A stretch of DNA of 64,000 bases from Okamejei kenojei (GCA_035221665.1 CM069133.1:35588001-35652000), one strand, 5' to 3'. Shown: positions 25,325 to 49,842, counted from the stretch's first letter. Translations and numbers: made by a program. Notes: generated from the letters alone by a model not told the origin.

Positions 25325-25816
25325 ATGTGGATCATTTTGGTTTATACCCTTTGTCTCTGTTTATGCCGTGAGTACGGCTCACACACTTCACACTGTTACG
25401 GTTTGCGTAAATTTGTCCGAGGCTATTTTTGAAATGAACTTGAATCGCCTTCCGAGTTAATTTGTTCGCCTCTGATGTCGATACATCTCTCCTAGTGTAT
25501 AATCGCCAGGCTCCTTCAGTCATTCCATGACCCAGAGTTCGACAGGGGTGACCGGGAAGAGTGCCAGTCCTTTACGAACTCCTGCCGCTTTCGGATTAGT
25601 TCGTTAAGTTCATACCGTTTTAACTCTGGACCCGTGTTCTAACCGACCCAGCCCGTGGAAGAGCTGCAGCGGGTCATCGTAGGGGGACCATGTGTCGTGT
25701 CGACCAATAAAGCGGACATGACTTTTACGCTGGAAATTCGGGACATGAGAGTTGGTGACAGCGCCAACTATCAATATGAAGCTACAGATGGCTGGATCGC
25801 TTGAGGTTTGGATATG
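25325..25816 (+). pseudogene. NAR-type (NAR-TCR-like) V segment pseudogene with leader exon
   Basis: Leader 25325-25367 MWIILVYTLCLCLC + c|gtgagt; acceptor cgccag|25510. V reads SFSHSMTQSSTGVTGK/QSFTNSCRF...VF*PTQPVEELQRVIVGGPCVVSTNKADMTFTLEIRDMRVGDSANYQYEA. Cys1-to-Cys2-position spacing is only 64 codons. One frameshift, TAA at 25640, and Cys2 mutated to Tyr. Confidence 0.82.
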
Positions 25817-25844
25817 CACATTGGAATGGAAGGGCGCATATAAC
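25817..25844 (+). promoter_or_regulatory. Degenerate RSS, best read with a 12-bp spacer
   Basis: cacattg (6/7) + 12 bp + gcatataac (5/9 to ACAAAAACC); no nonamer at 23 bp. Confidence 0.5.
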
Positions 25845-26110
25845 GAGGGTCACGCTATATGATTTTGATCGGCCATCAGAATTAAAGTATTGTTTTTATT
25901 AGTAACCTTGCAATGAAGTTCAATTTGATTGTAATGCTCTATTTCTAAGTTATTTGTCTTTGCCGTTTGGTTCCTGATAACGTCGGCCTCAATGGGAACA
26001 AAATCATCTACTAGACGTTTGGGAAACACGGAATATTATTTGTTCTTCTGAAGCACTGAAATAATTGGGCAGCGTTCCCTGTTGCTTTCCGGGCAAAATG
26101 GGGCGAGGAC

Positions 26111-26207
26111 TTTTCTTTTACCGGGAAGACTGAGGGCTGGATCACTGTGTATGACTGCCGTGCTTACTATAAAAATGGAGCGGGGACAAGCATGACTTTC
26201 ACGGCCG
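26111..26207 (+). pseudogene. J segment with 5' RSS (about 23-bp spacer) and mutated splice donor
   Basis: T-rich nonamer-like run at 26111-26120; perfect CACTGTG at 26143-26149; then YDCRAYYKNGAGTSMTFTA (GxGT motif) and phase-1 g|gaaagc where gtaagc is expected. Confidence 0.75.
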
Positions 26208-28472
26208 GAAAGCATCATAAAGGCGCTCTTTATATCCCTTGCCCAGGAATAATCAGCATAGTCGAAAATTGGGATCGTGTGATGTCAATGTCCGTCTAAG
26301 TGAAGCAACCCCAATTTCTAAATTTGTCTTGCAAAATGGCCCATGGGTATGTTGGCGCAGGGCGACAGGTCTGGTGTGATACCCGAGAGAGCATAATGAT
26401 GCACTTCTGAAGCAGAAGGATTGTGGATTTTGATGGACAAAAAATGACAGACTTGTCAGCCATGCACGCACAGCAGTAAAAGGAAAAAATAAATACGAAT
26501 TCCCGAGTTGGCGATGTTTGGGGGAACGGGGAAGACATACCGACTCTGAACGTTGTCAAATCCAAGAGATTACTGATGTGAGGGGAGCCCAATGGGGAAC
26601 GGTTTTACGAGGGGCCCACGTGCTCTATGAGTGTGAGAATACTCGATGCAATCCACAGAGCAAAGTTGATAGGGAGACGCTGAGCTGTGAGTAAGTCGGA
26701 AATCCCCGCGTAAAACAGCACGGACTCAAAGCAACTGACAACTGAATGCGGGAATGGTTTTCAGGAGGGGGAAATATGAACCGTAGGGAGCGAGAGGCGA
26801 GGAGGGAAGTACAACGGGTTCTGGGAACCTTGTTCATCAGTCAATGAAAATAAGCATGCTTGTACATCAGGCAGTAAAGAAAGCGAATGGCAAGTTGGCT
26901 TTCATAACAAGAGGAGTTGAGTACATTGCTTTAATACTTCAAGAATAAGAACAAATGATTCTTGACATTTGAAGCAAACAAAATCTCTCTTGTTAGGTGC
27001 TACTAATGTTCCACAATGGAAATATTTAACGCAAATGAAAATCCTGCGGATGAAGCTTCTAGAGGACAAAAGCAGACCGCTTCTTAATCAACAAGACATG
27101 GATCAATGGACCGGAATTCCTCTGTAAGTCAGAGAGAATATGGCCAAAGCTTGAGCTGGGATTTGAAATCTCTGGTAATTATGCGAAAATTAAACAAAAC
27201 ATCACAGTGAACTTCATTGCTAAAAATCCTATTATTCTATCGAAGGATATTCACATTTCAACATCATTGTTACGACACATTATGAATTGATCGGGCATGG
27301 AGGAAGAAGTTTCATGCTGTCAAAACTTTTGACTTTTGTGTTTGGACTATATACTGGGTATCATGCCTGATGTTAAGGGCTTGGTACGTACAGTACGACT
27401 TCAGACCAAGAATAATGTTTTAATAAGACTAATAACCAAGTTATGCTTGATTCTAGAATGCGAAGGTGATGAAAACATCGTTAAAGAAGTCTGAATGCTG
27501 ACATATAATGCATGCTATTTTTTGTTTTTTTTATAGCAACATTTTTAATATATTTTAGTAATTGCCTCGTTATATACTCAGAACAATTAGGGACCGGTAT
27601 GTAGTAGCCATTTAGCTTAACTCAGTATGTTATAACTATAAACAGTTACCTTTAACTTTTTCTGCCTGTGTGGGTGGGATATTTACGCAGTTGGAGGCGT
27701 GTTTGCGGCTGGGATTCTCGCACAGACGTAATAGTAATTAGTTTAGTTTAGTTTTAAGAAGCATGGGGGGGGGGGGGCGTCACAGCTTTCGACCATGCAC
27801 GAGTTCCACCAAGCACGAATTGGACTACGAGTAAGATCAAAATGTACTTAAACAAGAAGAAGTTTGGATGAATATCTCCCTGTTTTTACTACTGCAATAA
27901 AGAGACTACTAATTAAGAGGCTGTGTTTGGAAGAATTATTTTTCGACGGCATTAAATGTCTCGTGGAGAGCTCATAAATGCGTTTAAATGTCCCCTGAAT
28001 CCCTGCCATCAATCATAGTGACTAGAGGAAAGATTCCTTGAATGATATGAAAATCTGTCACTACAAAGGTGCTCAAAAAGGCTTTTGGCACTTTAGCCTT
28101 TCATCAATCACAGTACTGAACGTAGAAGTTGAGAGGTCATGTTGCAGTTGTATAAGACGTTGGTAAGACCGCTTTTACAATATGTTGTTAAGGTCTGGGC
28201 ATCAAATTATAGGAAAGATTTTGTCAAATTTGAAATGGTCTCTATTCCATGGAGAGCAGGAAGATGAATGGTGATCTAAAAGAGGCGTATAAAATCATTA
28301 TAGGAAGATACTTAGAGACCCTTTCTGGAGCAGTTGCATGGAGGACCGGAGAACATAGGGTAATGAACGACTACCCTCGTGATTGTTGGCGTATAACATC
28401 ACACGGGAGCAAAATCCGTAATGAATGTCCACAGGGAGGTGATCTCAATAACTCATTAATCTTTTCCTTAGC

Positions 28473-28480
28473 TTATAAAT
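28473..28480 (+). promoter_or_regulatory. Candidate TATA box of the GPCR gene
   Basis: ttataaat about 80 bp upstream of the ATG; conserved as atataaat in the paralog near 46660. Confidence 0.45.
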
Positions 28481-28557
28481 GTTCAGTGTATATAACATCT
28501 CCCACTATAACATCTGTGAGCTTCGTACTGCATTTCAGAGGTCGCAGTGAAGGAGAA

Positions 28558-28627
28558 ATGGGTCGCCTCCTGCACTTGCCGATTGATTATTATTATTACC
28601 CAATCCTGGCAATAATTGGAGTGCCAG
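28558..28627 (+). CDS. GPR139-like class A GPCR, coding exon 1
   Basis: MGRLLHLPIDYYYYPILAIIGVP + g|gtatgt phase-1 donor; encodes the first half of TM1. Confidence 0.88.
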
Positions 28628-28861
28628 GTATGTCACTTGACGCATGAAAGTGGGACGATCTTGACGTCATTTGATTGGGAAACGACAATGATGAAAGTAA
28701 AGAGAAAATGTTGTGAGAAAATGTGCTAAATGCTAGGATGCACATTGGAACGGTGTTTGGGGAATAACCTTAAGTTAATGTAGTTATTGTATGCTTTAAC
28801 TATATTTCATAGCTTGCCGTTTACTGGGACTGGTATAGAATTGTTCTTGAATTATTGTTAA

Positions 28862-29212
28862 GAGTCAAGTCAAGAGTCAATAGTGTTTATTGTCATATGT
28901 CCCGGATGGGACAATGACATTCTTACCTGCTGCAGCTCAACAGAATATGTGAATATGTAATCATTGTATATAATGGGGAAAAAAACGTTCAATGAATAAC
29001 AAATATAGTGGAAATAGCTAATAATAATATAGTATTTTGCTGTTCAGAGCTCAAAGCTTATTCGTTGTGTTTAATAGCCTGATAGCTGTGGGGATGTAGC
29101 TGTTCCTGAACCTGGACATTACAGGCTTCAGGCTCCTGTACCTTCTTCTTGATGGCAGTGGTGAGATATGTGTGTGGCCAGGATGATGTGGGTCCTTGAT
29201 GATTTTCGCTCT
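28862..29212 (-). mobile_element. Rex1-type LINE 3' end in the GPCR intron
   Basis: IIKDPHHPGHTHISPLPSRRRYRSL...RFRNSY with aataaa and a short-repeat tail; absent from the paralogous intron. Confidence 0.75.
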
Positions 29213-29694
29213 AGTGAAGTAACAGCCAAGTAAGCTGAGCGACAAAGGCTTTATATGTTTATACCAGGGGCGATTGCATTTCCCGCGTCTATTTTTGTCT
29301 CCATCTGGTTTCCCATTTTATGGCTTTAAATTTAATTAATTTTAATTGTGAGATTACCGCATCGGGTGCTGGTAATCTCTATTATACACCGCCCCCTTCA
29401 AACGTTGCAAACCCGGTAAGCAAATGCCGATCCGAAAGGTGCACCCGATTAACACTAATTTTAGCCTTGTTGGTCAAACTACACTTCCGTTTAAACCGTC
29501 TCTCGGTTGATTAATTCACTGTTAGGTAGAATGTCTGTTCGTGAGCGCAGTAGATTGTCTTCAAACCAAAGGAAATCTCCGTCCATGCCATGCTTTTCAT
29601 AATTTTAGGAAAGTAACAATATATACCCACCCATTACTCAACTCGAAGTTCTTCTGTCCACATAATCACCATTGCTTCTTTCTTACTCCCCTAG

Positions 29695-30605
29695 TGAATC
29701 TACTGGCGATTGTGGTCCTGTCCCGAGGAAAGTGCGGTCTCTCTAAATGCATCACTCGTTATCTGGTGGCTATGGCGACGGCGGACCTCACGGTGATTGT
29801 TGGCGAAGTGATTTTAAATCGGATTGCTGTTCTTTATTGGTGGAACACAATCCTGTACTACACGGCAGTGTGCAGGTTTATTCTCTTCCTGTCCGCCGCG
29901 GCCGTGGACTGCTCCGTATGGTTCACGGTCGCTTTCACATTTGATAGGTTTGTGGCCATCTCCAAACAGAATCTGAGATCCAGATACTGTACTGCCAGAA
30001 CCGCGGCTGTGGTAATAGTGACCATATGTACCTTCTGCTGTTTGCAGAACGCTCCCTGGCCTTTCACATTTAATTCTTTCTACAGGTATAATGGTTTACT
30101 GTGGGGCTGCCGAATCATATCGGACTTCTATTTCCTGCCCGCATGGATCGCATTTTCTTGGATTGAGCCGCTATTGACCCCAGTGATTCCATTCTGTTTG
30201 ATTTTGTTCTTTAATGCGCACACGGCGAGACGTATTTTAATGGCCAATCGGGTCCGCAGAAGGCTCTGCGATCTCAGTCGTGGAGACCCGGAGACGGAAA
30301 GCCGTAAACGGTCAATAATTTTACTCTTTGCAATCTCCAGCAGCTTTATCCTGCTCTGGGTCACAACTGTATGTCATTTTGTTTACTATCGATGTGTCAA
30401 CGGATTTTGGATGCGAGGTTTGACAAACCCATTTGCAACATTCCAAAAAACTGGAGCTCTGCTGCAGCTGCTGAACACCTGTACAAACACAGTGATTTAC
30501 ATCGTCACCCAGGGGAAGTTCAGAGAGCAGCTCCTTCACGCACTGCAATGGCTCGTCGCGCTAACTGGAAAGTTATTGAAACTTATCAAATCATGTTTAC
30601 AATGA
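29695..30605 (+). CDS. GPR139-like class A GPCR, coding exon 2 (spliced product 326 aa)
   Basis: Acceptor cttactcccctag|tg joins in frame (GVP-VNLLAIVVL). Seven hydrophobic segments overall, AMATADL in TM2, FTFDRFVAI (DRY variant) and NTCTNTVIY (NPxxY variant). No disabling lesions. Orthology not established. Confidence 0.92.
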
Positions 30606-31721
30606 CATCAGGTAACAAGTCTTCCCGTGTGTGACTTTATGGATCTCTGGTGAAGAGGGAGCATTGAACGAAAATCTCACCTATCTTTCCAAAACATTTA
30701 AAAACATGTCACTCATCTTCAGCTAAAAACAATAACTTCCTCCGGACATATAGCCATTTCGGCGGCCCCATCGCTCCCCAGACCCGTCCCCCTGCCCTTT
30801 AAAATGAAAACCGCCGGCCTCCCTATTGCTTTACGGGTTGGGCGATCGGCGGGGACCTGATGTTCACTTCTACTCGAGCGGACGCCCAGTATTTCCAGTT
30901 GTAAAATTCCGCTACATCTCTGATTTCCTTTCAATGCAGCGGCCGCCCCATTCGGCTCTAAATGCCAAACCGCCAAAAGTTTCCCGACGCGCTCCACGTC
31001 CTTCGCACCTTAGTTCTTCGAAGCATTCCGTGCTTACTCATGAGGGTGCCCAAGTCACACATTTACTTGATGACATTAAAGTAGAGTGCGTCTCCAACAT
31101 TCCAGCTACAACATTTAGCTAAACGGGAGCTTCATTGTATTCCCGGAGCTCCCTTTCAACAGAACCGGTTATTCCCATTCCGAGGCGCTTTCGGATTACA
31201 TTACACTAATTAACCAAGCAGCAGATGGAAGTAACAAGAACTGGTGGTGTTCGTACAAGCCAGCGTAGCTACATAATCTATATTTTTAGAGGAAGGAGAT
31301 ATTGACAGTCTACCGATTCGACCGCGGTAATGTGCATATGTACGATTGATGTGCAGACGATCCGACGGTGTGTATACCTAAAGGGCGCATCTCCCATGTA
31401 GAGATTGGCTCCGCTGTCCCTTATCTGCTGAATGGATACTGTATTCTTCAAATATTTTACAATATTGCTCGTCAAGTCTGAGCATTCAAATTCAGGAACC
31501 AAATGTGGACCAGATTGACGAATCCTGACAGAGCCTCACTACATTCACAAAATACCCGGTAGAAAGTGACGCGAGGTTCTATGAGGTATTGTTAGCCTTT
31601 TGGCCAGTGACAAAGGACAAGTTAACTTCCAAGAGTCAAGAATGTTGTATTATCCTCTGTTCGAAAATGGAACAATGAAATACGTGCTTGCAGCACGATA
31701 ACAGATAAGTAAACATCGTGT

Positions 31722-34700
31722 GACTTCCGGCTGAGAGACGCTGCCGTCTTGCTCTGCTCCCGAAAGAATGTTTTAATGTTCTAAAATACGAGTTGGAAGG
31801 CGGGGCAGTTCTAAAATATTCTACCGGAGCTGCTATTTAATTGTGTGTTATCAGAAACTCCGCTGATAACAGAGAATAACTGCAGTTTTAAATGAAAAAA
31901 GGGAATCCTCGCCAGAGCCTGTAAAACCTGCTTCAAGACCTGCCACAAGAGAGTACTTGAAAAAACTTGGAAAGACTCCTCAATCCCCTCAAGCATCAGC
32001 TGGAAGCTCAGAAGAAGAAGCTGACTTTCGAAATCTTTCCACAGAAATGGAGGAACAAAGAGGGCATATGGAACAATTGGAAAAGTCAGTATTAACTTCA
32101 GTCACTGAAGTTATTTCTAAAGTGATACAAGATGGGAACATCGCGCTGGACAAAAGCCTCTCTGAAAAAATTAAACAAGGTAATGATACGCTGAAGGGGA
32201 AAATTCATGACTTAACCAAACGTGTGATTGAGGTTGAGGAGGATTTAAACAAAAAAATTAAGCGGGTTGATAAGGACTGTAATAAAAAGCTGGACGCAAT
32301 GTTAAAGTCTACTGAGGCGACTGTGGAAGGAATGGACAATACGATAACTGAGATGGCTAAGGAGATAAAGAGACTAAAAAAAGAAAAAGAAAGCACTGGG
32401 AGGGAGCTTGCTAAAATGAAGCATAAATGTACGGACTTGGAAGCAAGACCAAGAAGACAAAACCTGAGGATAGTTGCAGTAAAAGAAAGAAAGGAGAGTG
32501 GGCAAAACTTTCAGGAGTTAACTTACTTGCCAACTTACTCAAACAAGTGCTTAAGGTGCCTGAAGCCCGGAGAATAGATATGGCTCTCCGGGTCCGACGT
32601 AAGGTTCAAGCAAGCCCAACTGCCCCCCCAAGACACCCACACACAACTGACTGACTTCATTCATTTCACCACCAACTTCCATCCGGCACTCAAATACACT
32701 TGGACCATTTCCGACACTTCCCTACCATTTCTTGACCTCACCATCTCTATTGCAGGTGATACGCTCCTGACCGACATCCACCACAAACCTACTGACTCCT
32801 ACAGCTACCTGGACTACTCTTCCTCCCACCCTGCTTCCTGTAAGGACTCCATCCCCTATTCCCAATTCCTCCGTCTACGCCGCATCTGCTCCCAGGATGA
32901 GGTGTTCCACACCAGGTCATCACAAATGGCCTCATTCTTCAGAGAACGGGGATTCCCCTCCCCCACTATTGATGAGGCTCGCACCAGGGTCTCCTCCATA
33001 CCCCGCAACACTGCCCTCGCTCCCCATTCCCCCACTCGCAAACAGGGCAGAGTCCCCCTAGTCCTCACCTTTCACCCCACCAGCCGGCAAATACAACATA
33101 TAGTCCTCCGCCAGTTTCGCCACCTCCAACGTGACCCCTCCACCCGCCACATCTTCCCATCTCCCCCCCTGTCTGCCTTCCGCAAAGACCGCTCCCTCCG
33201 CAACTCCCTTGTCAATTCTTCCCTCCCCTCCCACTCTACCCCTTCCCCGGGCACTTTCCCTTGCAACCGCAAGAAATGCAACACTTGTCCCTTCACCTCC
33301 CCCCTCCACTCCTTTCAGGGACCCAAGCAGTCCTTCCAGGTCCGACAGAGGTTCACCTGCACCTCCTCCAACCTCATCTACTGCATCCGCTGCTCCAGAT
33401 GCCAGATGATCTATATTGGTGAGACCAAGCGGAGGCTTGGCGATCGCTTCGCCGAACACCTCCGCTCGGTCCACAATAACCAACCCGACCTCCCGGTGGC
33501 TCAGCACTTCAACTCCCCCTCCCATTCCACATCCGACCTCTCGGTCCTGCGCCTCCTCCACGGCCAGAGTGAGCAACACCGCAAGCTGGAGGAACAGCAC
33601 CTCATATTCCGCTTGGGGAGTCTGCATCCTTTGGGCTTGAATATTGAATTTTCTCAATTCTGTTAAGCCTTGCTGTCTCCCCCCCTTCCCACCTCTCCCT
33701 CAGCCCTCGCGCCCTGGCATTCCCTCGATCTCTATCTCCCTCCCCCACCCCAGTCGCACCAGCTTCTCATTTTCACACCACAAACAGCTTACAATGGCTT
33801 GTTCCCTTTATCACCGATACTTTTTTGCATATCTTTCACTCATTGTTCCTTATCTCTCCACATCACCGTCTGTATCTCTCGTTTCCCTGATCCCTGACCA
33901 GTCTGAAGAAGGGTCTCGACCCGAAACGCCGCCTATCTCCTTCGCTCCTTAGATGCTGCTGCACCCGCTGAGTTTCTCCGGCTTTTTGTGTACCCCCAAG
34001 ACAGATTATTCTGAAATTCTATGACATTTCAACCCTGGAAGGAATTATGAAACAGCTTCCATATGGTGTGAATTTGATGTTTGAAGAAGACAAACTAAAA
34101 TTCTTCCGTGATTTTCCAGCTGAAGTTATGGAAAAGAGGGACAAACGTTCAACGTGCATTCACGGTTCCAGACGAGTCATTTAATTATGCACAAAGTATC
34201 ACAAAGGAGGTCTACTGATCATGAGAAATGACGAAGAAAGAACTGTGTTTCTTTTTTTTTAACATAAAAAAATACTGCTCTGGTTAAGATGGAGAATTTT
34301 TCTCGAGGTGTTGTCTAGCCATTTTAACTTTGGAATGTTAACTCAAGGTCGGATTTTATGTTTGACTTCAACAAAGGATTGACAAAGAAGAAAAATTGTG
34401 GCGGGGAAAATAACTTGGGAATATGGAAAAATATTATCAGTGAACTTGTATATAGAAATTTTTGATTTAAGAAACACACAATTACATACTAACATAAAAT
34501 ATAATGAATAAAATGGTGTAATATTAAGGCATAGCTTAATAATGGCTAATGTTTATTTCATGATGTTAATTACTTGCTAAATATAAGAATAACAAGTTAA
34601 ATATGATTGATAAGTACTAATAACATACTAACAAATGTTATGGATATAGTAGATTTAGTCTAAATTGTGTGCAAAGAGGGGGGAGGAGACTCAGAGGCTT

Positions 34701-37700
34701 GGAAGTTACCCAAGGGTCTGAATCTGATTAACCCATTGGAACCTGCTGGTGTCTGACAACAGTTTGAGATGTAATTGTATTAGAGCTAGGCATATCAATA
34801 GATATGGATATATAATTAACATAATTACTGTTATATCTAAATATATACTCGGAAACTCTTTTTTATTTTGTTTTTTCTCTTTGAAGATATATTTCTAATC
34901 AATCTATTTGAGTGAATTTTATTTTATATATATATTTCTGAACATTCTATCGCTCTCTCTTCCAATTAATAATAACTGGTCAAGGGAACAGAGCGAAACA
35001 TATAAAAACATCTACGGAAGTCAACAACTTGGTGGTCTGTTTTTAATTATAATATCTTTATTTTTGGGTATTATAATATCACTTTTTGTTTGTTAAGTAT
35101 CTTTTCACGACTACACTTTCTGGTCTTTTTCAAGGTCTATTCTGAAGGGGAGATGCCAACAAAACTTAACAGCTGGGGATGACCATCCTCCTCCTAGAGT
35201 TATGAGGTTCTTGGTTGCACCATATGAAGTAAAGGTATTAACATGATTCATAATGCAAGACGATAAACAAAAGAAAACTGGAGGAATCACGTGCTGTAGT
35301 TGGAATATAAGCGGCGCTAATGAACCAATTAAAAGGGGTAAGATCTTTGCCCAATTAAAAGCCTTAAACAGGGATATCATTTTCTTACAAGAGACGCATT
35401 TGAAATATCACAGATAAGATTGAAGGCAAATTGGATTGGGCAAACATACTACTCTTCATTTACTTCTAAATCTAGAGGTACGGCTATTATCATTCGTAGA
35501 GGTATACCATTTAAATTAAAGAATACTATAGCAGATAAAGAGGGGAGGTATGTCATAGACACGGGAGAAATATATTCTACTCCACTTACTTTGATAAATA
35601 TTGATGCTCCTAATTTTGACAACCCCCAATTCCTTAGTAAAATTTTGGATACAATTACAGAATTTAATTAAAATGTGATAATAGGGGGAGATTTGAATAG
35701 TGTTTTAGATCCATATCTGGATAAATCAGCAAAACAAAAAAGGATTAACATAAAATCTAAAACTAGTGAACTCCTAAATACATACATGAAAAATACCAAC
35801 AAAACAGATGTATGGAGGATCGCTAATGCAGTAGGTAGGGAATATTCATTTTATTCAACGGTACATAAAACATATTCACGTATTGATTACTTCTTAGTGG
35901 ACATGAAACTAATTCCATATACATATAATTCTAAATATCATAATAGTTTTATTTCTGATCATTCCCCGCTAACTTTTTCTTTAAAATCGGATGGAATGCC
36001 TGATTAAAAAACTCGTTTTGGAGGTTTAACCCCCAAATCTTAAACAATTCACAAGGATGTACATATTTAAAAGAGCAGATGGGATTCTTTTTTGAGACAT
36101 ATGATACACCAGATATTTCACCCTCCTTATTATGGGAAACTTTTAAGGCATTTATTAGAGGAACTATAATCTCATATCAAGCTTTCCAAAATAAAAAAAA
36201 AATAACACTGAACAATTGCAGTTAGAACAAGAAATTAGGCAATTACATTTAGAAAATGCTAAAGAACCAACTGTAGATAAAGATAATAAGATAACAACAC
36301 TAAAATATAAATTAAATAAAATTTTATCGGCCAGAATAATAAGATTATTTCAAACTATAAAACAAGAAAATTTCGAATTTGGTGATAAACCACATAAACT
36401 CTTAGCACGCCAACTGAAAAAAACGGGAAACAGAAAATACTATTAATAAAATTAAATCAGACAAAGGGGAATTGCTAACACTACCTAAAGATATTCATAA
36501 AAGATTTGCTCAATTTTATCAAAATTTATATACATCGAAAACCTCTGCAAATAATACTCAAATTACAAATTTCTTAGACAATTGTAATCTTCCAAAATTA
36601 AATATGGTGGAACAAGAGGGATTAGAAGACCAGATTACACTACAGGAAATAGAAGAAACAATAAATTCGTTGAAGAATGGCAAAACGCCAGGACCAGATG
36701 CCTTTAGTAATGAATTCTATAAAAGATTCTATGAGATAATTTCTCCATGCCTGCAAGATTTATATATATACGCTTTAAAAGAAAATAAATTACCAGAAAC
36801 ATTAACTGAGTCAACGATTATACTTATACCAAAAAAAGATAAAGATCTAGAAGACCCAGGCTCATATAGAGCTATTGCACTCCTAAATACAGATAAGGAA
36901 ATATTAGCAAAGACCCTAGGGAGAAGATTGAGTAAATATGTTAGCAAACTAATAAACCCGGACCAAACAGGGTTTTTACCAAAGAGATACACTTTTAACA
37001 ATTTGAGACGGCTGTCTAATATAATGTACTCACATAATACTGAAGAAGAACTAGCAATTATTTCATTGGATGCAGAAAAAGCTTTCGATCTAGTAGATAG
37101 CAATATTTATTCAAAGTATTGCAAAAATTTAACATGGGGAAAACTTTATCTCATGGGTAAAATTATTATATGATAAGCCGACGGCTAGAATACTGACTAA
37201 AAATATATTATCCCCGAAATTCCAATTAGCAAGGGGCAATAGGCAGGGGTGCGTACTATCGCCCCTGCTATTTGCACTAGTGATAGAGCCTTTAGCAGAA
37301 AGTCTAAGAAGTCATCCGAATATTTATGGATATAATACCAAACACTCAAGTAATAAAAATTCATTATATGCAGACGACATATTACTATATATTACAAATT
37401 CACAAATTAGCATACCAAATATACTAAACTTAGTAGAGGAATTTGGTTATTTTTCAGGAAATAGAATAAATTGGAACAAAAGCGAAATTATGATGATAAA
37501 ACCTCAAGAGCCGACACATTTGTTGAAATTTCCCTTTAGAATTGCAACAGAAAAATGTAAGTATTTGGGCATCCAAATCACTTGGAAATATAAATCATTA
37601 CTCACCACAAACTATATGCCTTTATTAACTAAATTAAATGGGTTGATTACATTTTGGAAAACACTGCCAATGTCCTTAATAGGCAGAATAAACACGATAA

Positions 37701-38200
37701 AAATGATCTTCTTACCACAAATCTTGTACCTATTTATATCAATACCAATATACCTACCTAAAAAATTCTTTAGAAAACTAGACTCTGATATTATAAACTT
37801 CATATGGGATTATAAATCACACAGAATTAAAAAAAAACAACACTTGTGTAAATCTAAAGAATCAGGGGGACTGACACTTCCTAACTTATTGTATTACTAT
37901 TGGGCACTGAATATTAAAAATATAATCTATTGGTTGGACAGTTCTGCCCAACAGGTAGATTGGATAAGAATGGAGAAAGAGGATTGTTCCCCTTATAATA
38001 TAGGAGCGATCCTTCTTTCCCCAATGAAACTGAACAATATAATATATAAGAAGAATCCAATTATTCACAGTATAATACAAATTTGGAAACAAATAAAACT
38101 AACTTTAAAATTAAGAAAATTATCACTTCTTTCTACAATAGCTAATAATCCCTCATTCAAACATCCATTATTGATAAAAACGTTTATCCATTGGGAAAGT
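31722..38200 (+). mobile_element. L1-clade LINE, 5' end through most of ORF2, degenerate and 3'-truncated
   Basis: 5' gacttccgg; ORF1 coiled coil and DLEARPRRQNLRIV; ORF2 endonuclease SWNISG...FLQETHL, IIGGDLN, YSRIDYF, SDHSP; RT KTPGPD, SLDAEKAFD, LYADDILL. Confidence 0.92.
32636..33992 (+). mobile_element. Penelope-like element (RT C-terminus + GIY-YIG) inserted in L1 ORF1
   Basis: NLIYCIRCSRCQMIYIGETKRRLGDRFAEHL; 11-bp direct repeat cccccaagaca at 32625-32635 and 33993-34003. Confidence 0.92.
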
Positions 38201-38285
38201 GAATCCTCCTCCTTTTCTGTGGGTGGACAGTATCATCAGAAAAGTGATCAATAATCAGTATCATCAGGTAAGTGATCAATAATAC

Positions 38286-40162
38286 TCAGTGTCCTTCATC
38301 TTCATCTGCTTCTTCCTCTACTTCTTCCCCTTCCAATTTTGTCTGAATATCTCGAGTGAATTCAAGAGCTTCTGTATGTTTGGTGAAGCGGTGCTCCTTG
38401 TTATCATAAGTTACCCTTAATGTTGCCGGGTACATCAGGCCATATCTCAGATTCTTTATGTTCCTCAGGATATCTCTTGTTTCTGTAAATAACGATCTCC
38501 TCTTGGCCACTTCTGCAGGGTAATCTCTAAAAATACTGATGTTATCTCCCTCATATTTGAGATTTTTCTTACGTATTATTATCTTCGTCATATCTTCAAA
38601 AACATAATTGTAAGCCACCTTCACAATCATCTGTTTTGGGGGAGCATCCCTTCTAGGGGTATGTCTCAATGCCCTGTATGCTCTGCCCAGCAGAGGTTCT
38701 TGGTCCAAGTTCAGAATATCTTTTAGAAGTTTTGCAGAAAATTTTTGAGGGTCTTGATTTCCCTCTCGGCCTTCACTCAACCCAACAATACGCAGATTCT
38801 TATGCCTTTGACATCCCTCCATCGAAGCATTTCTCAGTTATTTTGTGTAATAATTCTGATAAACGCTTGTTCTCGGCAAGGCGCTCCTCGGCTGATTCAG
38901 TCAGTTCTTTTATTCTGTCATTTTGTTGGTTAAGTGAAGTTATAATAGGTTCTAACTTGGTATCCAGCAGCACCTCCATCTCACCAGTATTACGGTTTAC
39001 ATCATCCATCTGTTGTTGTAAATCAGTACCCGCTTTATCTTTCCATTCGTCCATCATAGTCTTTACAGCGGCTATAACTTCCTTTTTGGACTCTTCTTTC
39101 AAATTCTCATGATACACCAAAATATCAGCTCTTAAAGTCTTTATTTCCTCTTTATATTCTTTTTTCATATCCTTAATGTGACATACGCTTTGTGCTCACA
39201 ATCACTGCTCAAAGACCAAATCGTGGAAGCAAGAGATTCTTTATTTTACGAGTCTGCAGAAGCGGGTGCCTCTCCAAGTTGAGACACTCCGAAGTCAGAA
39301 AAGTCATCCCCCTTTATACACACAATTCTACATCCAACCTCCCCTCCGGACCCTTCTCCAATCAGGGTCTGAGGTGCACAATCTGTAGGTACATCCCCCA
39401 GTACCTCCCACATCATACATCGCATGTTCATGGTAATGAGCAGTTTCTTGACCAGGGGTGTGTTGTAATATTCATTTATTCTATTAAGCATGCTCAGTTG
39501 TTCATGACCTACCCTAGTTTTACTCACCTCCAAGTGAACCCTCTCAGTTCTCCTATATCAGTGCTAAAGCTAAGCTATAGTGACAAGGAACCCATCTATC
39601 ACTCCATTCTTCTGATAGGGATCTCTCTACATCACTCCCTTCTACCGCTATACAATGCTATCACTTCTTACTCAAGGATGAGTCTGGTAACTTTTATACA
39701 CAGCTGTGTCAGAACCCTCTCCCTGGCCCCTATCAGTTTGAATCCTCTTTAAAGCTCCTTATTATAGTGGGGTTTAATCACTTTATCCCTCACATTAAGC
39801 ATTTGTTTCAGCTCACCCATAATGTTTTTTTTTGAGGTCGTCCATCTTTAAAATATCTTTCTGGGAGGCACTCAAACTCGAGCCCGAGGCTCCAATGAGG
39901 CCTACTTCCCTTTTCACAGGCTTTTTCACTTGGTGGGGGGGGGGGGGGGGGGGGGGGGGGGGAGCGATGCAGCGACATTTTCTTAGTAAAGTCGCGCGCC
40001 TGATGACGTCACGCAAACTTTTTAACGCTACTGGAGCAGTTCACAACCGTTCTCCTCTGGTGAGTAGCTTCAGTTAACCCCTTTTACCCCCGTTTTTAAT
40101 ACAATTTTAGCGGAGATGAATGGCGCGAGTTCCACTCACTCTATAGCGCCACCGGAAGTCCC
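38286..40162 (-). mobile_element. Second L1-clade element, 5' UTR and ORF1 only
   Basis: Minus strand begins gggacttccggtggcgc; ORF1 motifs NLRIVGLSEGREG, RAYRAL, IFRDYPAEVAKRR and YGLMYPATLRV. Confidence 0.85.
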
Positions 40163-40599
40163 AAATATGTAATATTTAAGCTAATGTTTATATGGTGATC
40201 AATCTCTTTATCTCAGGAAGTTGCAGGCAGTTCCTTGGAAAATGCGGTGACTGAAGAAAGCGAACTTACAGCTCTTAATGGAAAGTAACGAATTTTCCCT
40301 GAAACATTGACAACTGTTCATATCAATGTCGATTCAAATTGATGTGTTCATTATCCCTTTAACATTCGAGACTGAAGTCTGCCCAGAATCAAATATCTAA
40401 CATTGCTCTCCGAGTGTTCCTTTGATCATTGTCTTACAATGGATGGGCGTTTATCAGTGTTCAGGATTGTATTGGTTGAATACATTTTAAGTGCTGATTG
40501 ACGATTAACTATTGCTGTAAATCAGAAAGGAACCCGCCCCGTCATGTTCCTTTGCTGCTTTGAATCCATAATAACAGCAGAGAGGGCAGAGGGGCTACC

Positions 40600-41680
40600 A
40601 CCTGAAACATTGATGACTGATTTGGGGTTACCTCCTGTACCCAGCCAGAACTTCCGGACTTCATTAACGTCACAACTAATTTCCATCCCACACCCAAATT
40701 CACTTGGACCATCTCCGATATCTTCCTTAATCCGCCACAGGAGATAGACTATCGACAGACATCTGCTATAAACCTACTGACTCCCACATCTACCTAGACG
40801 ACATTTCTTCCCACCCTACCTCCTGTTAAGACACTATCCCCACGCCCAATTCCTCCGTCTGTGCCGCATCTGTCCCTCACTAGGGTCTTCTCGATAGCCC
40901 ACAATATCCTGCAGACTTTATATTTCACCCCATCAGCCATCGCACAAGGCACATAACCCTCCGATATTTCCGTAACTTTTACTGGGGTCCTATCACGAGC
41001 CATATCTTCCCATCTTCAACCCAGCAGTTTTCCGCAGAGACCGCTCCCTCCGCAACTCACTGGTTTACACGTCCTTCCAGATAACACCCCTCTCTCCTGC
41101 CCCATCTTAGGTATTTCCCCCTGCAACCACGGGAGCTATAGAACCTGTCCTTACACCTCCTCCCTAGAATCCGTCCAAGGGCCCGGACAGTCTTTACAGG
41201 TGGGGCAGAGATTCACTTTCATCTCCTCCAACCTCATCTACCGTATCTGCTCTTCCAGCTGTCGGTTCCTATATATCGGCGATACCAAGCACAGGCTCTT
41301 CAATGGATTCGCTGAAAACCTTAGCTCAGCCCGCCTGGACATGCCTGATCTCCCGGTTGCCAAACACTTTAATCCCCTTCCCATTCCCACACTAACATCG
41401 GGCTTCTAGGCCTCCTCCATTGTCAGAGCATGGCCAAACACAAATAAAAGGAACAACATCTCATATTTCGCTTGGACAGCTTACAACCCAGTGGAATGAA
41501 TATCGATTTCCCTAACTTCAAGAAACTTCTGCATTCTCTCTCTCCCCATTCCTACCTCAGCTGGGTCGCGGTAGATTCCATGTTATCTTGTTCTGTCTCA
41601 TTGTCTATACCCCGTTCAAAACTGAGAAACAGCTAACAATGTATTTTTTTCTTTATCATTGTTACTTTTTTGCATATATT
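40600..41680 (+). mobile_element. Degraded Penelope-like fragment
   Basis: Collinear with 32640-33840; NLIYRICSSSCRFLYIGDTKHRL. Confidence 0.85.
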
Positions 41681-41682
41681 GG

Positions 41683-42045
41683 AAACATAGAAACATAGAA
41701 AAATAGGCACTGGAGTAGGCGATTCGGTCATTCGAGCCAGCACCGCCATTCAACACGATGACTGCTGATCATCTATATCAGTACCTCGTTCCTGCATTTT
41801 CCCCAATACCCATTGATTCCTTTAAGAGCAACATCTTACTCGCTCTTGAAAACATCCAGTGAATTGGCCTCAACTATTTTCTGTGGCAGAGAATTCCACA
41901 GATTCACAACTCTCTGGGTGAAAATGTTGTAACTTATCTCATCCCTAAATGGGCTCCTCTTATTCTTAAACCGTGACCCCTAGTTTTGTACTCCCCCAAC
42001 ATCGGGAACATTTTTCCTATATCTAGCCTGTCCAATTGTTTAAGA
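41683..42045 (-). mobile_element. CR1 3' fragment
   Basis: (aaacatag)n tail and LDRLDIGKMFPMLGEYKTRGHGLRIRG. Confidence 0.85.
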
Positions 42046-42119
42046 ATCGCACCGTATTCCCAAAGTCGGTTGCGTTTACTTTGTATCATCAATTCTTCAC
42101 TCACTGTAAGGTGTTCCAG

Positions 42120-42417
42120 GTCTGGTTGATTCAGATTCCAGCACCCAAGAGGATGGTCCGCTGACACATACAGAGGGTCAAAGCGCCACTTTCACATGTA
42201 CCTATTCTAAGGATAATTATTACTTATACTGGTATCGCCAATATCCAGGCGGACAGCCGAGTTTGCGGTCCGGCGATAACTAACGGTGGCTGTGACCCGA
42301 ACGCAGAATTCGCTCGAAATCGTTTTTCGGACGCAGTCCAGCAGTCGGTGAAGAAATATCGATTGACTCGGGACTGCGTCTGACTGATACGGCAGTTTAT
42401 TACTGCGCAGTGGATCA
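42120..42417 (+). pseudogene. TCR alpha/delta-type V segment pseudogene
   Basis: Acceptor gttccag| (phase 1); LVDSDSSTQEDGPLTHTEGQSATFTCTYSKDNYYLYWYRQYPGGQP / AEFARNRFSDAVQQSVKKYRLT / GLRLTDTAVYYCAV; frameshifts and a stop; no leader exon seen. Confidence 0.92.
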
Positions 42418-42456
42418 CACAGTGTTGAGAATGGCGCGAATTTCAAGCGCACAGCT
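42418..42456 (+). promoter_or_regulatory. RSS of the TCR V segment
   Basis: Perfect CACAGTG at 42418-42424 just after YYCAVD; nonamer degenerate, so a 23-bp spacer is presumed rather than shown. Confidence 0.7.
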
Positions 42457-45400: not shown

Positions 45401-46739
45401 CATGTAAGCATATTATAATTTAATAGGTGATTATTGTGGCATAACGCGATCACCACGGATTGCACCTTGCTTTAAAGTACCGATGAAGTAAATAGAGAAA
45501 CTTTCCGTGCTCATGGTGCCCACTACAACACCCGGTTTTAAAAGTCCTTGTTACATCAGAGTTCTGTGCACGACTGGGAAATATGTCCAATGTTATAGAT
45601 ATATGTTATTCACAAGAACCCCGATGTCTATCTAAATTGGACAATTATCAAAATCTAACATCATCCATGGCCCACGTATTCCTGATATATCTTAAAATAT
45701 CAATTGACGGCCTCCATAGCCTTCTATGGCAATGAATTCCACAGATTCGCGACCCTCCGACTAAAGAAATGTATCCTCGTCTCCTCTATAAAGGAACGTC
45801 ATATTATTTTGAGGCTGTGGCCTCTCGTCCAAGACTCTCCCACTAGTGGACACTACCGCTCCACATCCACTTTATCCGGACCTCTCACAATTCGATAATT
45901 ATAATGAGGTGCTCCCCTCATCAACGCTGATGTGAAGGACAATGCACCAACAAAATAAAATTAAAAACTAACTTTTCATGCAGATGGGGTCGCGCAAGCT
46001 TCCTCACCAAACGTCCTATGAAGGGTGGTTTGTATATGGAACGGAAGAGGTACGTGAGGCAAGTAAACTAATAACGTTTGAGATACATTTGGACCGACAT
46101 GAGTTGGATAGGTTTAGAGGGCTATAGTGGGCTGGTGGGGCGTTTAAATTGAATATGATGGTTGGCGTGGACAAGTTGGGCCCGATGGCCTGTGTGACTC
46201 TATAACTATATGACCGTATCATATATCCCACTGCAGAATGTAAATAAGACCGCTCACAGGAACATTTCTATTTTATATTTCAACAGGACCTCCTGGAAAA
46301 ACCTGGGATAAAATTAATAATGGGTAGATGTGAAGCGATTAGGTCAGTGTCTGGGAACTGTAGTTCAAGGTCTCGACATAAACTATTTCATCGTACCGTG
46401 TGGTGTTGACTGATATTTCTGTCCGACCTTCCACACCTGCAACCTCGTGGAGCATATTTAAGTTTAGAAATATTATTCACTATTTTATTCACTAATATCC
46501 TACTTTACAATTCCTTTGTTCTGTACGTGCTCAATTGGTGCACATGAGACGAGCGGCCACACTAATGAGTGTTATCATATAACATCACATGGGAGCAAAA
46601 TCGGTAATATATGTCCACAGTGAGGTGATAACAACAAGTCGTTAATCTTTTTCTTGGATATAAATGTTCGGCGCTTTAGCCTCCCAGTACATAATCTGTG
46701 AACATTGTTCTGCATTTTGGAGGTCTCTTTGAATGAGCA

Positions 46740-48596: not shown

Positions 48597-49035
48597 CATC
48601 AGGTAACAAGTCTTCTCGAGTGTGACTGTATGGATCGCTGAAGAGGGAGCATTGAACGAAAATCTCACCTATGTTTCCAAAACATTTCAGAAAATGTCAC
48701 TCATATTCGGCAAAAACTATAATATCCCCTGCACATGACGACATGTAGGCTTTTAGGCCCGACCCAAGACCCACCACCTGCCCTTTAAAATGAACACCGT
48801 CCGCCACCCTATTGCTCAACGGGTAGGGCTGTCATGGGGAACCCGATGTTAATTTCTACTGTAGCGGACCTCCAGTATCTCCGCGTTTACAACATTCCTC
48901 AACATCTCTGATTTGCTTCCAATCCAGCGGTCACGCCACTAGGCTCTCATTGCCCAAACCTTTAAAAAGTCAGTCGTCGAACCGTTCCACGTATTTCTCA
49001 CTTCTCTTATTTGAAGCACTCGTGATTATAAATGT

Positions 49036-49842
49036 GAGGTTATCCACTTTGGTGGCAAAAACAAGAAAGCAGACTATTATCTAAATGGTGGCCGATTAGG
49101 AAAAGGGGAGATGCAGCGAGACCTGGGTGTCATGGTACACCAGTCATTGAAAGTAGGCATGCAGGTGCAGCAGGCAGTGAAAAAAACGAATGGTATGTTA
49201 GCTTTCATAGCAAAAGGATTGAGTATAGGAATAGGGAGGTTCTACTTCAGTTGTACAGGGTCTTGGTGAGACCACACCTGGAGTGTTGCGTACAGTTTTG
49301 GTCTCCAAATCTCAAGAAGGACATTATTGCCATAGAGGGAGTGCAGAGAAGGTTCACCAGACTGACTCCTGGGATGTCAGGACTGTCCTATGAAGAAAGA
49401 CTGGATAGACTCGGTTTATATGCTCTAGTATTTAGGAGATTGAGAGGGAATCTTATAGAAACTTACAAAATTCTTAAGGGGTTGGACAGGCTAGATGCAG
49501 GAAGATTGTTCCCGATGTTGGGGAAGTCCAGGACAAGGGGTCACAGCTTAAGGATAAGGGGGAAATCCTTTAAGACCGTGATGAGAAAGACTTTTTTCAC
49601 ACAGAGAGTGGTGAGTCTCTGGAACTCTCTGCAACAGAGGGTAGTTGAGACCAGTTCATTGGCTATACTTAAGAGGGAGTTAGATGTGGCCCTTGTGGCT
49701 AAGGGGATCAGAGGGTATGGAGAGAAGGCAGGTACGGGATACTGAGTTGGATGATCAGCCATGATCATATTGAATGGCGGTGCAGGCTCGAAGGGCCGAA
49801 TGGCCTACTCCTGCACCTAATTTCTATGTTTCTATGTTTCTA
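49036..49842 (+). mobile_element. Young CR1 3' fragment
   Basis: Near-identical to 15710-16530; absent from the paralogous flank near 31035. Confidence 0.92.

What the first reader, a model, noticed from the sequence alone, without database searches (positions are those of the whole stretch)
25325..42456. Hidden NAR-TCR-like cassette: leader + NAR-type V + J upstream of an apparently leaderless TCR V
Seen: a leader exon, a short V lacking the usual CDR2 length (GGP.VVSTNKADMTFTLEIRD), an RSS-flanked J ending in phase 1, and 16 kb downstream a TCR alpha/delta-type V with a phase-1 acceptor and its own RSS, all on the same strand. None appears in the ORF track. Known: shark NAR-TCR chains splice a rearranged NAR-like VDJ onto a leaderless supporting TCR-delta V. 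Inference: this is a fossil NAR-TCR unit in a probably batoid genome, stretched by TEs and an intervening GPCR gene. Caveats: the TCR V leader could simply have been destroyed by the adjacent CR1/Penelope insertions, and its CDR1 lacks the extra Cys reported for supporting V domains.
Basis: partly seen in the sequence, partly recalled or inferred. Interest (0 to 1): 0.85.

Follow-up and report, generated by a model that had tools for sequence, protein, structure and literature searches.

The report
Dead NAR-TCR V-J relic, unrelated V
A skate genome segment holds the broken remains of the antibody-like outer V gene of a shark-type two-headed T-cell receptor (NAR-TCR), but the V gene 16 kb downstream is an ordinary, separately decayed T-cell receptor V, not its partner, so this is gene debris and not a hidden working cassette.

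Summary

- **Leader:** 25325-25367.
- **NAR-type V exon:** starts at 25510.
- **J:** 26150-26207, behind a perfect heptamer.
- **TCR alpha/delta-type V (V2):** 42120-42417, with a heptamer.

**V1 is a NAR-TCR V.** It has the a-b loop Cys and lacks the FR2 Trp. It sits inside the NAR-TCR V clade (100/100), nearest the batoid genes. The J matches the NAR-TCR J consensus. The module is dead: it carries a frameshift, a TAA stop and a Cys-to-Tyr change, and the J splice donor reads GA instead of GT. DNA contigs from two samples match the frameshift, stop and donor sites exactly; the Cys-to-Tyr site was not seen covered.

**V2 is not a supporting V.**
- It scores 41-42 bits on a supporting-V profile. 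True members score 142-184 bits and ordinary V genes 45-80 bits.
- It is 26-37% identical to supporting V genes but up to 48% identical to ordinary, leader-bearing shark V genes.
- It lacks the CDR1 Cys.
- It falls outside the supporting clade (98/89).

An intact GPR139-like gene lies between the J and V2, and a second, broken GPCR copy follows V2. The layout is therefore V-GPCR, V-GPCR. No supporting-V remnant was found anywhere in the window.

**Verdict:** a solitary, decayed NAR-TCR L-V-J module next to an unrelated V pseudogene. Interest is low. The scan has noted intact NAR-TCR cassettes elsewhere in this genome.

The parts
25325..25367 (+). Leader exon (L-part1) of the NAR-TCR V pseudogene, phase 1, donor GTGAGT at 25368
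   Evidence: Reads MWIILVYTLCLCLC, like the leaders of NAR-TCR gene models (MGILLFFVLSLCL..., MGILLVFSLCVCL...)..
25510..25816 (+). NAR-TCR-type V exon, a pseudogene. It has a 1-nt frameshift at about 25557-25561, a TAA stop at 25640-25642, and the second canonical Cys replaced by Tyr (TAT at 25775-25777).
   Evidence: phmmer 61 bits to a shark NAR-TCR model against 27 bits to the best VNAR. tblastn E=1.6e-16 to sawfish P0128. NAR HMM 82 bits. Inside the NAR-TCR V clade at 100/100. ECQS a-b loop Cys present and no FR2 Trp. DNA contigs of two samples are identical over 25420-25678.
25817..25844 (+). Weak 12-RSS-like site 3' of V1 (CACATTG, 12-bp spacer, GCATATAAC)
   Evidence: Heptamer 6/7 and nonamer 5/9. 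It lies about 13 codons after the Cys position, further out than the heptamer that skate gene models read through as HSDG. Its meaning is unresolved.
26111..26149 (+). 23-RSS of the J (TTTTCTTTT, 23-bp spacer, CACTGTG)
   Evidence: Heptamer 7/7 and nonamer 5/9.
26150..26207 (+). NAR-TCR-type J segment ending in phase 1. The expected donor at 26208-26209 reads GA, not GT.
   Evidence: AYYKNGAGTSMTFTA+G compared with skate TYYQDGTGTTVTVTA+D and R. longicauda TYYKDGTGTTVTVTG+D. The motif is unique in the window. A DNA contig is identical over 26109-26418.
26808..28415 (.). High-copy repeat block between the J and the GPCR gene
   Evidence: Word depth is 10^3 to 10^5 here against about 10-70 in the flanks (table 2). 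The sequence has LINE RT-tail-like text.
28558..30605 (+). Intact two-exon GPR139-like GPCR gene (exon 1 28558-28627, exon 2 29695-30605), lying between the J and V2
   Evidence: Pfam 7tm_1 E=8e-17. 87% and 85% identical to two Amblyraja radiata GPR139-like proteins. Splice sites and open frame were read directly.
31957..41681 (+). TE-rich interval: Penelope-like GIY-YIG pieces (32902-33666; 40999-41681) and a LINE endonuclease/RT (35675-38254)
   Evidence: Pfam RVT_1, GIY-YIG and a weak Exo_endo_phos_2 match. Self-similarity of 41000-41476 to 33147-33616.
41682..42048 (.). SINE-like repeat, about 10 copies in the window, inserted 70 bp upstream of the V2 exon
   Evidence: Self-BLAST.
42120..42417 (+). 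Ordinary TCR alpha/delta-type V exon, a pseudogene. It has a TAA at 42281-42283 and at least two frameshifts (around 42260-42290 and about 42360). There is no CDR1 Cys.
   Evidence: Pfam V-set 28.8 bits. PDB matches include TCR alpha V domains (e.g. TRAV6-5, TRAV12-2) as well as antibody scFv/light-chain V domains. Ordinary-V HMM 72 bits against supporting-V HMM 41 bits. 48% identical to P0216 and near P0192, both of which have signal peptides.
42418..42424 (+). RSS heptamer CACAGTG of V2; the nonamer is not recognisable
   Evidence: The nonamer is at most 3/9 at either a 12- or 23-bp spacing, read directly.
46566..50039 (+). Second GPR139-like GPCR copy, a pseudogene interrupted by a repeat at 49028-49843
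   Evidence: 74-85% DNA identity to 28380-31234. tblastn gives fragmented matches in several frames.

Best explanation
The interval holds two independent, non-functional V gene relics in a block of a skate genome where V segments alternate with GPR139-like GPCR genes.

(1) At 25.3-26.2 kb lies a solitary, decayed NAR-TCR module: split leader, NAR-TCR-type V, a weak RSS, and a NAR-TCR-type J with a 23-RSS. In a live cassette this module rearranges, and its J is spliced in phase 1 onto a leaderless supporting TCR-delta V. Here the V has a frameshift, a stop codon and a lost canonical Cys, the J splice donor is gone, and no supporting V follows it. It can make no receptor chain.

(2) At 42.1 kb lies an ordinary TCR alpha/delta V pseudogene. 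Its upstream leader exon has been separated or destroyed by SINE and Penelope-like insertions.

The two are separated by an intact GPCR gene and about 11 kb of retroelements, and a second (broken) GPCR copy follows V2, so the local order is V-GPCR, V-GPCR.

Shown: the identity of each part, the defects, and the exclusion of V2 from the supporting-V family.
Inferred: that the supporting V was lost or never copied, and that V2 once had a leader.
For: V1 is a NAR-TCR V.
- The 53-aa piece scores 61.3 bits on a horn shark NAR-TCR gene model against 27.4 bits on the best VNAR in the PDB, using the same query and program.
- The 10 of the 13 significant hits that I looked up were nine elasmobranch gene models, mostly two-V NAR-TCR models, and one bacterial Ig-repeat protein.
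- tblastn E=1.6e-16 to a sawfish model. NAR HMM 82 bits, against 12 (ordinary) and 7 (supporting).
- It lies inside the NAR-TCR V clade at 100/100, nearest batoid genes.
- In alignment, ECQS supplies the a-b loop Cys and VF*P stands where the models have FFKR, so there is no Trp. These are the hallmarks given in PMC1845163.

J: it matches the consensus (T)YY.DG.GT.VTVTA that precedes every supporting V, abuts a perfect heptamer, and the motif is unique in the window.

The defects are real. Contigs from two samples are identical over 25420-25678 and 26109-26418.

V2 is not a supporting V.
- Supporting-V HMM: members score 142-184 bits, ordinary V genes 45-80, V2 41-42.
- Identity to supporting V genes is 26-37%, while batoid and shark supporting V genes share 47-69% with each other. 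Identity to ordinary V genes reaches 48%.
- The supporting clade (98/89) excludes V2.
- CDR1 reads YSKDNYY where members have YSGFC.Y.
- The relatives P0192, P0216, P0219 and P0190 have signal peptides, and V2's first residues LVDS align with their DLSHG.

No other V relic turned up in a six-frame HMM scan of the window. The GPCR between the J and V2 is intact, and a second GPCR copy lies after V2.
Against: - The AU test does not reject V2 as sister to the whole supporting clade (p=0.40). It only nearly rejects V2 placed with the batoid supporting V genes (p=0.069, delta lnL 33). The alignment is short (99 columns) and V2 is a long branch.
- No leader exon for V2 was found in 30.6-42.1 kb by a detector that does find the V1 leader, so 'leaderless' cannot be formally excluded.
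The normal J-to-supporting-V distance therefore rests on unchecked scan notes.
- No batoid IgNAR V sequence was available for the tree.
Confidence: 0.85

Rival explanations
1. The V at 42120 is the original leaderless supporting TCR-delta V of the 25.3 kb NAR module, and TE insertions plus a GPCR gene have stretched one unit to 17 kb.
For: Same strand. V2 has a phase-1 acceptor at 42118-42119. No leader exon was found for V2. The AU test cannot exclude V2 as a distant sister of the supporting clade (p=0.40). Much of the intervening DNA is TE.
Against: - V2 scores like an ordinary V on the supporting-V profile: 41 bits against 142-184 for members.
- It is 26-37% identical to supporting V genes, which are 47-75% identical to each other across sharks, sawfish and skates.
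- It has no CDR1 Cys.
- Its exon starts with GT, so a J-to-V2 splice would give Gly, not the Asp seen in nearly all of the roughly 60 gene models examined.
- A phase-1 acceptor is normal for any V exon.
- V2's exon begins with a leader-tail homologue.
- A complete GPCR gene with its own two exons lies between, and a paralogous GPCR follows V2, which suggests V-GPCR repeat units.
- The J donor is GA.
Confidence: 0.05
2. V1 is an IgNAR V pseudogene (an antibody heavy-chain V), not a NAR-TCR V.
For: The 27 best of 36 PDB matches to its C-terminal piece are VNAR domains. The PDB holds no NAR-TCR V to compete with them.
Against: - It scores twice as high on NAR-TCR models: 61 against 27 bits.
- It has the a-b loop Cys and lacks the FR2 Trp, which separates NAR-TCR V from IgNAR V according to PMC1845163.
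- The J is of the ...TVTA+G type that precedes supporting V genes.
- No IgNAR-named protein was among the looked-up hits of the 1.8-billion-protein search.
Confidence: 0.03
3. The juxtaposition or the defects are assembly artefacts, and a live cassette exists at this locus.
For: The public contigs laid on the stretch are short, so long-range order is not independently checked. A second version about 92% identical over 25420-25678 exists in both samples (table 8).
Against: The frameshift and stop (25420-25678) and the GA donor (26109-26418) are reproduced without a single difference in contigs of two samples from two studies. One of them may be the assembly's own source.
Confidence: 0.03

Closest known systems
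NAR-TCR (doubly rearranging TCR-delta of cartilaginous fish; Criscitiello, Saltis and Flajnik 2006, as described in PMC1845163, PMC5931798, PMC6795676 and PMC12227049)
   Same: - V1 has the split leader, the a-b loop Cys and no FR2 Trp.
- It has the short NAR-type C'-C'' region.
- It has its own RSS-flanked J ending in phase 1.
- It groups with the NAR-TCR V genes of sawfish and skates.
   Different: - It is a pseudogene: frameshift, stop, Cys to Tyr.
- The J donor is lost.
- No D segment is recognisable.
- No supporting V follows the J; a GPCR gene does instead.
NAR-TCR-associated (supporting) TcR-delta V family
   Same: V2 is a V-set domain of the broad TCR alpha/delta type, on the same strand, with a phase-1 acceptor and no detectable leader exon.
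   Different: - No CDR1 Cys.
- 26-37% identity to members.
- 41 bits on the family HMM, against 142-184 for members.
- Outside the family clade.
- The first codon would not give Asp.
- 15.9 kb from the J, with a gene in between.
Ordinary elasmobranch TCR alpha/delta V segments (e.g. the V of the whale shark model P0192 and Pristiophorus P0190, which are joined to a delta-type C region)
   Same: V2 shares their FR1, FR2 and FR3 pattern (EGxxxTFxCTY..YYLYWYRQ...DFA.NRFS..LQ.S.K...LT..GL.LTDTAVYYCA). Identity reaches 48%. Its exon begins with a leader-tail homologue and it keeps the RSS heptamer.
   Different: V2 is broken by a stop and by frameshifts. Its leader exon is missing, with a SINE and a Penelope-like tail in its place, and the nonamer has decayed.
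V-gene orphons / pseudogene V segments of antigen-receptor loci
   Same: Isolated, non-functional V segments left by duplication within or away from the main locus.
   Different: Whether this block lies outside the main TCR alpha/delta locus is only inferred. The best GPCR homologues lie on a different A. radiata chromosome from that species' NAR-TCR models.

Membership tests
NAR-TCR V (NAR-TcRV) | Typical split leader peptide | tested here: met
   Leader exon 25325-25367 with a GTGAGT donor. The acceptor at 25509 restores the frame, giving R-SFSHSMTQS, like the skate ...LRHSFSQSVTQS.
NAR-TCR V (NAR-TcRV) | Cysteine in the a-b loop (PMC1845163) | tested here: met
   ECQSFTNSC aligns with ECQSLTITC / ECESVTITC of the gene models.
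NAR-TCR V (NAR-TcRV) | Canonical Trp of the WYRK motif absent (PMC1845163) | tested here: met
   GPVF*PTQP aligns with G.FFK.TQP, so no Trp is present.
NAR-TCR V (NAR-TcRV) | Groups with NAR-TCR V sequences in a tree or profile | tested here: met
   Clade support 100/100. Batoid subclade SH-aLRT 98. NAR HMM 82 bits. No IgNAR V sequences were available to include in the tree.
NAR-TCR V (NAR-TcRV) | Own D and J segments with RSS for a separate VDJ rearrangement | tested here: inconclusive
   The J with a 23-RSS is present. No RSS-flanked D was found between 25.8 and 26.15 kb. A weak 12-RSS-like site follows an extended V end.
NAR-TCR V (NAR-TcRV) | J spliced in phase 1 onto a leaderless supporting TcR-delta V lying just downstream | tested here: not met
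   The phase is right, but the donor reads GA (26208-26209). No supporting-V remnant was found anywhere in the window.
NAR-TCR V (NAR-TcRV) | Open reading frame with both canonical cysteines (a functional member) | tested here: not met
   Frameshift at about 25557, TAA at 25640-25642, YYC changed to YQY. The frameshift and stop sites are confirmed by DNA contigs identical over 25420-25678; the YQY site (25775-25777) lies outside the contigs listed.
NAR-TCR supporting TcR-delta V | Conserved cysteine in CDR1 (PMC1845163) | tested here: not met
   V2's CDR1 reads CTYSKDNYYLYWY, where members have C.YSG.C.YTVHWY.
NAR-TCR supporting TcR-delta V | Sequence membership in the supporting-V family | tested here: not met
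   HMM 41-42 bits against 142-184 for members. Identity 26-37%. Outside the 98/89 clade. The AU test alone does not exclude a sister position (p=0.40 and 0.069).
NAR-TCR supporting TcR-delta V | No leader peptide | tested here: inconclusive
   No L-part1 exon was detected in 30.6-42.1 kb. However, the exon starts with a homologue of the leader tail of its relatives, and a SINE plus a Penelope-like tail occupy the position 70 bp upstream.
NAR-TCR supporting TcR-delta V | Lies directly 3' of the NAR J in a compact cassette, and its first two bases complete an Asp codon | tested here: not met
   It is 15.9 kb away with an intact GPCR gene between. The exon starts with GT, whereas nearly all models read ...TAD.
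Ordinary TCR alpha/delta V segment | V-set domain nearest to leader-bearing TCR alpha/delta V genes, followed by an RSS | tested here: met
   Pfam V-set above its cut-off. PDB matches include TCR alpha V domains alongside antibody V domains. Ordinary-V HMM 72 bits. The relatives have signal peptides. The heptamer CACAGTG is present and the nonamer has decayed.
IgNAR V | FR2 Trp (WYRK) and IgNAR C exons downstream | tested here: not met
   No Trp. No TCR-delta C-domain match in the window by tblastn with the sequences at hand. IgNAR C sequences themselves were not available to test.

The most novel reading that the evidence does not exclude
The NAR L-V-(D)-J module stands alone, detached from any supporting V. 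It sits in a V/GPCR satellite block whose GPCR orthologues in Amblyraja radiata lie on a different chromosome from that species' NAR-TCR array. If so, it would be a natural example of the 'mobile NAR V' step: a NAR V-J unit copied away from TCR-delta. That step is what has been proposed for the origin of IgNAR from a NAR-TCR V (PMC12227049). Its extended V end, followed by a 12-RSS-like site facing a 23-RSS J, could also mean a germline V-D join.
Probability: 0.07. Interest if true: 0.45.

Novelty: new member of a known kind. Interest (0 to 1): 0.18.

Why it matters
It matters little as biology. It is one more dead gene segment in a locus type known to be full of them, and NAR-TCR is already described in sharks, batoids and chimaeras.

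It has three practical uses.
- It corrects an attractive but wrong reading (a 17-kb stretched two-V unit).
- It provides a set of about 70 NAR-TCR gene models that public annotation gives unrelated names, together with family profiles that separate NAR V, supporting V and ordinary V cleanly. These can be used to check the other NAR-TCR notes of this scan.
- It shows that NAR V-J modules can persist without their supporting V next to GPR139-like genes, which bears on how these cassettes duplicate.

Tried and rejected
I could not fetch the A. radiata loci of the GPCR homologues, or any intact cassette, to measure the normal J-to-supporting-V distance or look for orthologous relics.
- **Papers not held:** Criscitiello 2006 (PMC1458790) and Ott 2021 (PMC7909615). 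Defining features were taken from PMC1845163 instead.
- **V1 N-terminal piece:** the PDB search (25496-25639) found nothing. That piece spans the frameshift, so only its last 27 residues (25559-25639) are in the true V frame. Pfam also does not recognise the short V1 pieces.
- **Database searches** were made piece by piece, by reference. A joined reading with X at each break was built only inside local scripts, for HMM scoring and trees.
- **RNA evidence:** no run on record as RNA holds the stretch. The two 'RNA?' runs of the same species label cover only the repeats and are probably DNA. Expression and J-to-V splicing could not be tested. Absence here proves nothing.
- **AU tests** could not formally exclude V2 as a distant sister of the supporting clade.
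- **Leader scan for V2** found none.
- **'IgNAR-like V relic' at 7624-7890:**
- **Species name:** not obtainable, because run names are coded.

Full report
**Observation.**
- The leader exon (25325-25367) encodes MWIILVYTLCLCLC and ends in phase 1 at a GTGAGT donor.
Joined in phase it reads R-SFSHSMTQSSTGVTGK.
- A J-like segment (26150-26207) directly follows a perfect heptamer CACTGTG, with a T-rich nonamer at a 23-bp spacing.
- At 42120 a second V exon starts after ttccag, also in phase 1. It ends in DTAVYYCAVD followed by the heptamer CACAGTG (42418-42424). No nonamer is recognisable.
- The J motif occurs once in all six frames of the window and never in 50 shuffles.

**What V1 is.**
- The stop-free 53-residue piece 25643-25801 finds 36 PDB chains, and the best 27 are all shark VNAR domains (best E=2.7e-5, 27.4 bits).
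- The same piece searched against 1.84 billion representatives gave 13 hits. The 10 I looked up were one bacterial Ig-repeat protein and nine gene models from elasmobranch genomes.
- Read directly, these models are NAR-TCR chains: leader, NAR-type V, J, a second V, and in some a delta-type C region. The best scores 61.3 bits, twice the best VNAR.
- A second search seeded with the sawfish model brought in about 50 more (53 hits in all). They include six from Amblyraja radiata and one each from Leucoraja erinacea and Rhinoraja longicauda. Public annotation gives them unrelated names.
- V1 has both hallmarks that PMC1845163 gives for NAR-TcRV as against IgNAR V. Aligned to these models, ECQS supplies the a-b loop Cys, and VF*P stands where the models have FFKR, so the FR2 Trp is absent.
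- A profile of NAR-TCR V genes scores V1 at 82 bits, against 12 (ordinary V) and 7 (supporting V).
- In ML trees V1 lies inside the NAR-TCR V clade (100/100) and, in the larger quick tree, inside its batoid part (SH-aLRT 98).
- The J reads AYYKNGAGTSMTFTA plus one base. The consensus before every supporting V is (T)YY.DG.GT.VTVTA plus the first base of an Asp codon.

**V1 is dead.** Relative to the models it has several defects.
- A one-base frameshift near 25557-25561.
- A TAA at 25640-25642 where the models have Lys.
- YQY in place of YYC, so the second canonical Cys is lost.
- GGPC in place of GGRF.
- After the J's last base the sequence reads GAAAGC, so the GT donor is missing.

Logan contigs from two samples in two studies match 25420-25678 and 26109-26418 without a single difference. 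The frameshift, the stop and the donor loss are therefore not slips of this assembly. One of the two samples may be the assembly's own source. The Cys-to-Tyr and GGPC sites lie outside the contigs listed.

**What V2 is.** This is the crux of the interpretation. The second V of the gene models, the supporting V, is strikingly conserved (DS.S....PP.Q.S..GDT..L.C.YSG.C.YTVHWYRQ.PGQA...LLQRHTSG...).
- A profile built from 33 supporting V genes scores true members at 142-184 bits, ordinary TCR V genes (shark, chimaera, zebrafish, frog, turtle) at 45-80 bits, and V2 at 41-42 bits.
- A profile of the ordinary V genes scores V2 at 72 bits.
- V2 is 26-37% identical to supporting V genes. Batoid and shark supporting V genes are 47-69% identical to each other, and skate and sawfish ones 55-75%. 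V2 is up to 48% identical to ordinary V genes.
- For scale, the equally broken V1 keeps 40-52% identity to batoid NAR V genes, which are 52-66% identical between skates and sawfish. Decay alone does not explain V2's distance.
- V2 has no CDR1 Cys.
- The supporting clade (98/89 in the careful tree, SH-aLRT 96 in the quick tree) does not contain V2, which sits among ordinary V genes.
- The AU test is weaker. Holding V2 with all supporting V genes is not rejected (p=0.40), since a sister position costs little on 99 columns. Holding it with the batoid supporting V genes costs 33 log-likelihood units (p=0.069).
- V2's nearest relatives (P0192, P0216, P0219, P0190) begin with normal signal peptides. 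V2's first residues, LVDS-DSSTQ, align with their DLSHG-DSVTQ. V2's exon therefore still carries the tail of a leader, as an ordinary split-leader V gene does.
- Its exon starts with GT, so a splice from the J would give Gly. Nearly all of the roughly 60 models examined have Asp there.
- V2 is itself a pseudogene, with a TAA at 42281-42283 and at least two frameshifts.

**Why no leader is seen.** A 367-bp SINE-like repeat with about ten copies in the window ends 70 bp upstream of the V2 exon. The tail of a Penelope-like element directly precedes it. A simple leader-exon detector that finds the V1 leader finds none in 30.6-42.1 kb.

**What lies between.**
- After the J come about 600 bp of low-copy DNA, then a high-copy repeat block (26.8-28.4 kb, table 2).
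- Next is an intact two-exon GPR139-like gene on the same strand: exon 1 at 28558-28627 and exon 2 at 29695-30605. It matches 7tm_1 at E=8e-17 and is 87% identical to an A. radiata protein.
- Then come Penelope-like and LINE pieces.
- A second, broken copy of the same GPCR lies at 46566-50039, after V2.
- The local order is therefore V1-J, GPCR, TEs, V2, GPCR. That looks like two V-GPCR units and not one stretched cassette.
- A six-frame scan of the whole window with the three V profiles finds only V1 and V2. No supporting-V remnant is present, and no TCR-delta C region was detected.

**Mechanism and status.**
- In a live cassette, by established knowledge (PMC1845163, PMC5931798, PMC6795676, PMC12227049), the NAR V-D-J and the supporting V-D-J rearrange separately, and the NAR J is spliced to the leaderless V.
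- Here every step is blocked. The V cannot be translated, the J cannot be spliced at its normal site, and there is no partner V.
- I infer that the supporting V was either deleted or never included when this module was copied.
The evidence is thin.

**Context.**
- The genome is a skate. The best GPCR hits are from A. radiata, and V1 groups with batoid genes.
- GPR139-like genes and NAR-TCR models share contigs in A. radiata, sawfish, little skate, R. longicauda and horn shark. This supports the scan's notes that these GPCRs interleave with the TCR alpha/delta locus.
- The two A. radiata proteins closest to this window's GPCR lie on a 131-Mb chromosome, while that species' NAR-TCR models lie on a 59.9-Mb one. 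This block may therefore be a satellite copy (an orphon). That is inference only.

**Limits.**
- No RNA data bear on the stretch.
- No batoid IgNAR V sequences were in the tree.
- Database searches were made piece by piece, by reference. The joined reading with X at each break was used only in local scripts.

**Verdict.** The NAR-TCR identity of V1 and the J is strongly supported. The pairing with V2 is not supported. This is an ordinary pseudogene relic of a known system, and interest is low.

Noticed in passing
window 28558-30605 and 46566-50039: An intact two-exon GPR139-like GPCR gene lies here, with a broken paralogue (74-85% DNA identity) 18 kb downstream. Each follows a V pseudogene, giving a V-GPCR, V-GPCR order.
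   Followed up: partly
proteins P0001-P0120 and P0121-P0210: GPR139-like genes and NAR-TCR gene models lie on the same contigs in five elasmobranchs: A. radiata (59.9 Mb), Pristis pectinata (57.8 Mb), Leucoraja erinacea (208 kb), Rhinoraja longicauda (49.5 Mb) and Heterodontus francisci (59.5 Mb). [quoted passage not shown] The window's own GPCR is closest to two A. radiata genes on a different, 131-Mb chromosome.
   Followed up: partly
proteins P0121-P0210: About 70 RefSeq gene models that read as NAR-TCR chains (leader, NAR V, J, supporting V, with or without C-delta) carry unrelated names. Examples are immunoglobulin kappa light chain-like, Down syndrome cell adhesion molecule-like, lachesin-like, Ig heavy chain Mem5-like, and T cell receptor alpha chain MC.7.G5-like.
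   Followed up: partly
window 25420-25678: Both DNA samples also hold a second contig over this part of V1 with 20-21 differences (about 92% identity). This is either a paralogous copy of this V or a divergent haplotype. Its frame was not visible.
   Followed up: no
window 25775-25844 and 26111-26149: V1 has an extended end (YQYEATDGWIA) before a 12-RSS-like site, facing a J with a 23-RSS and no recognisable D. TDGW faintly resembles the GTVDYW string seen between V and J in three skate models. A germline V-D join is possible but unproven.
   Followed up: partly
Profiles of NAR-TCR V, supporting V and ordinary V found nothing there at E up to 5.
   Followed up: partly
window 14959-19592 and 56269-61828: Two stretches of about 1.6 kb each recur about 41-42 kb apart at about 89% identity (14959-16534 with 56269-57826; 17927-19592 with 60159-61828). 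They may be TE copies or a larger segmental duplication.
   Followed up: no
window 41682-42048 and about 9 other sites (e.g. 440-807, 9395-9751, 16160-16530, 24326-24681, 49470-49840, 57470-57822): A SINE-like repeat family of about 370 bp, 72-77% identical between copies, in both orientations.
   Followed up: no
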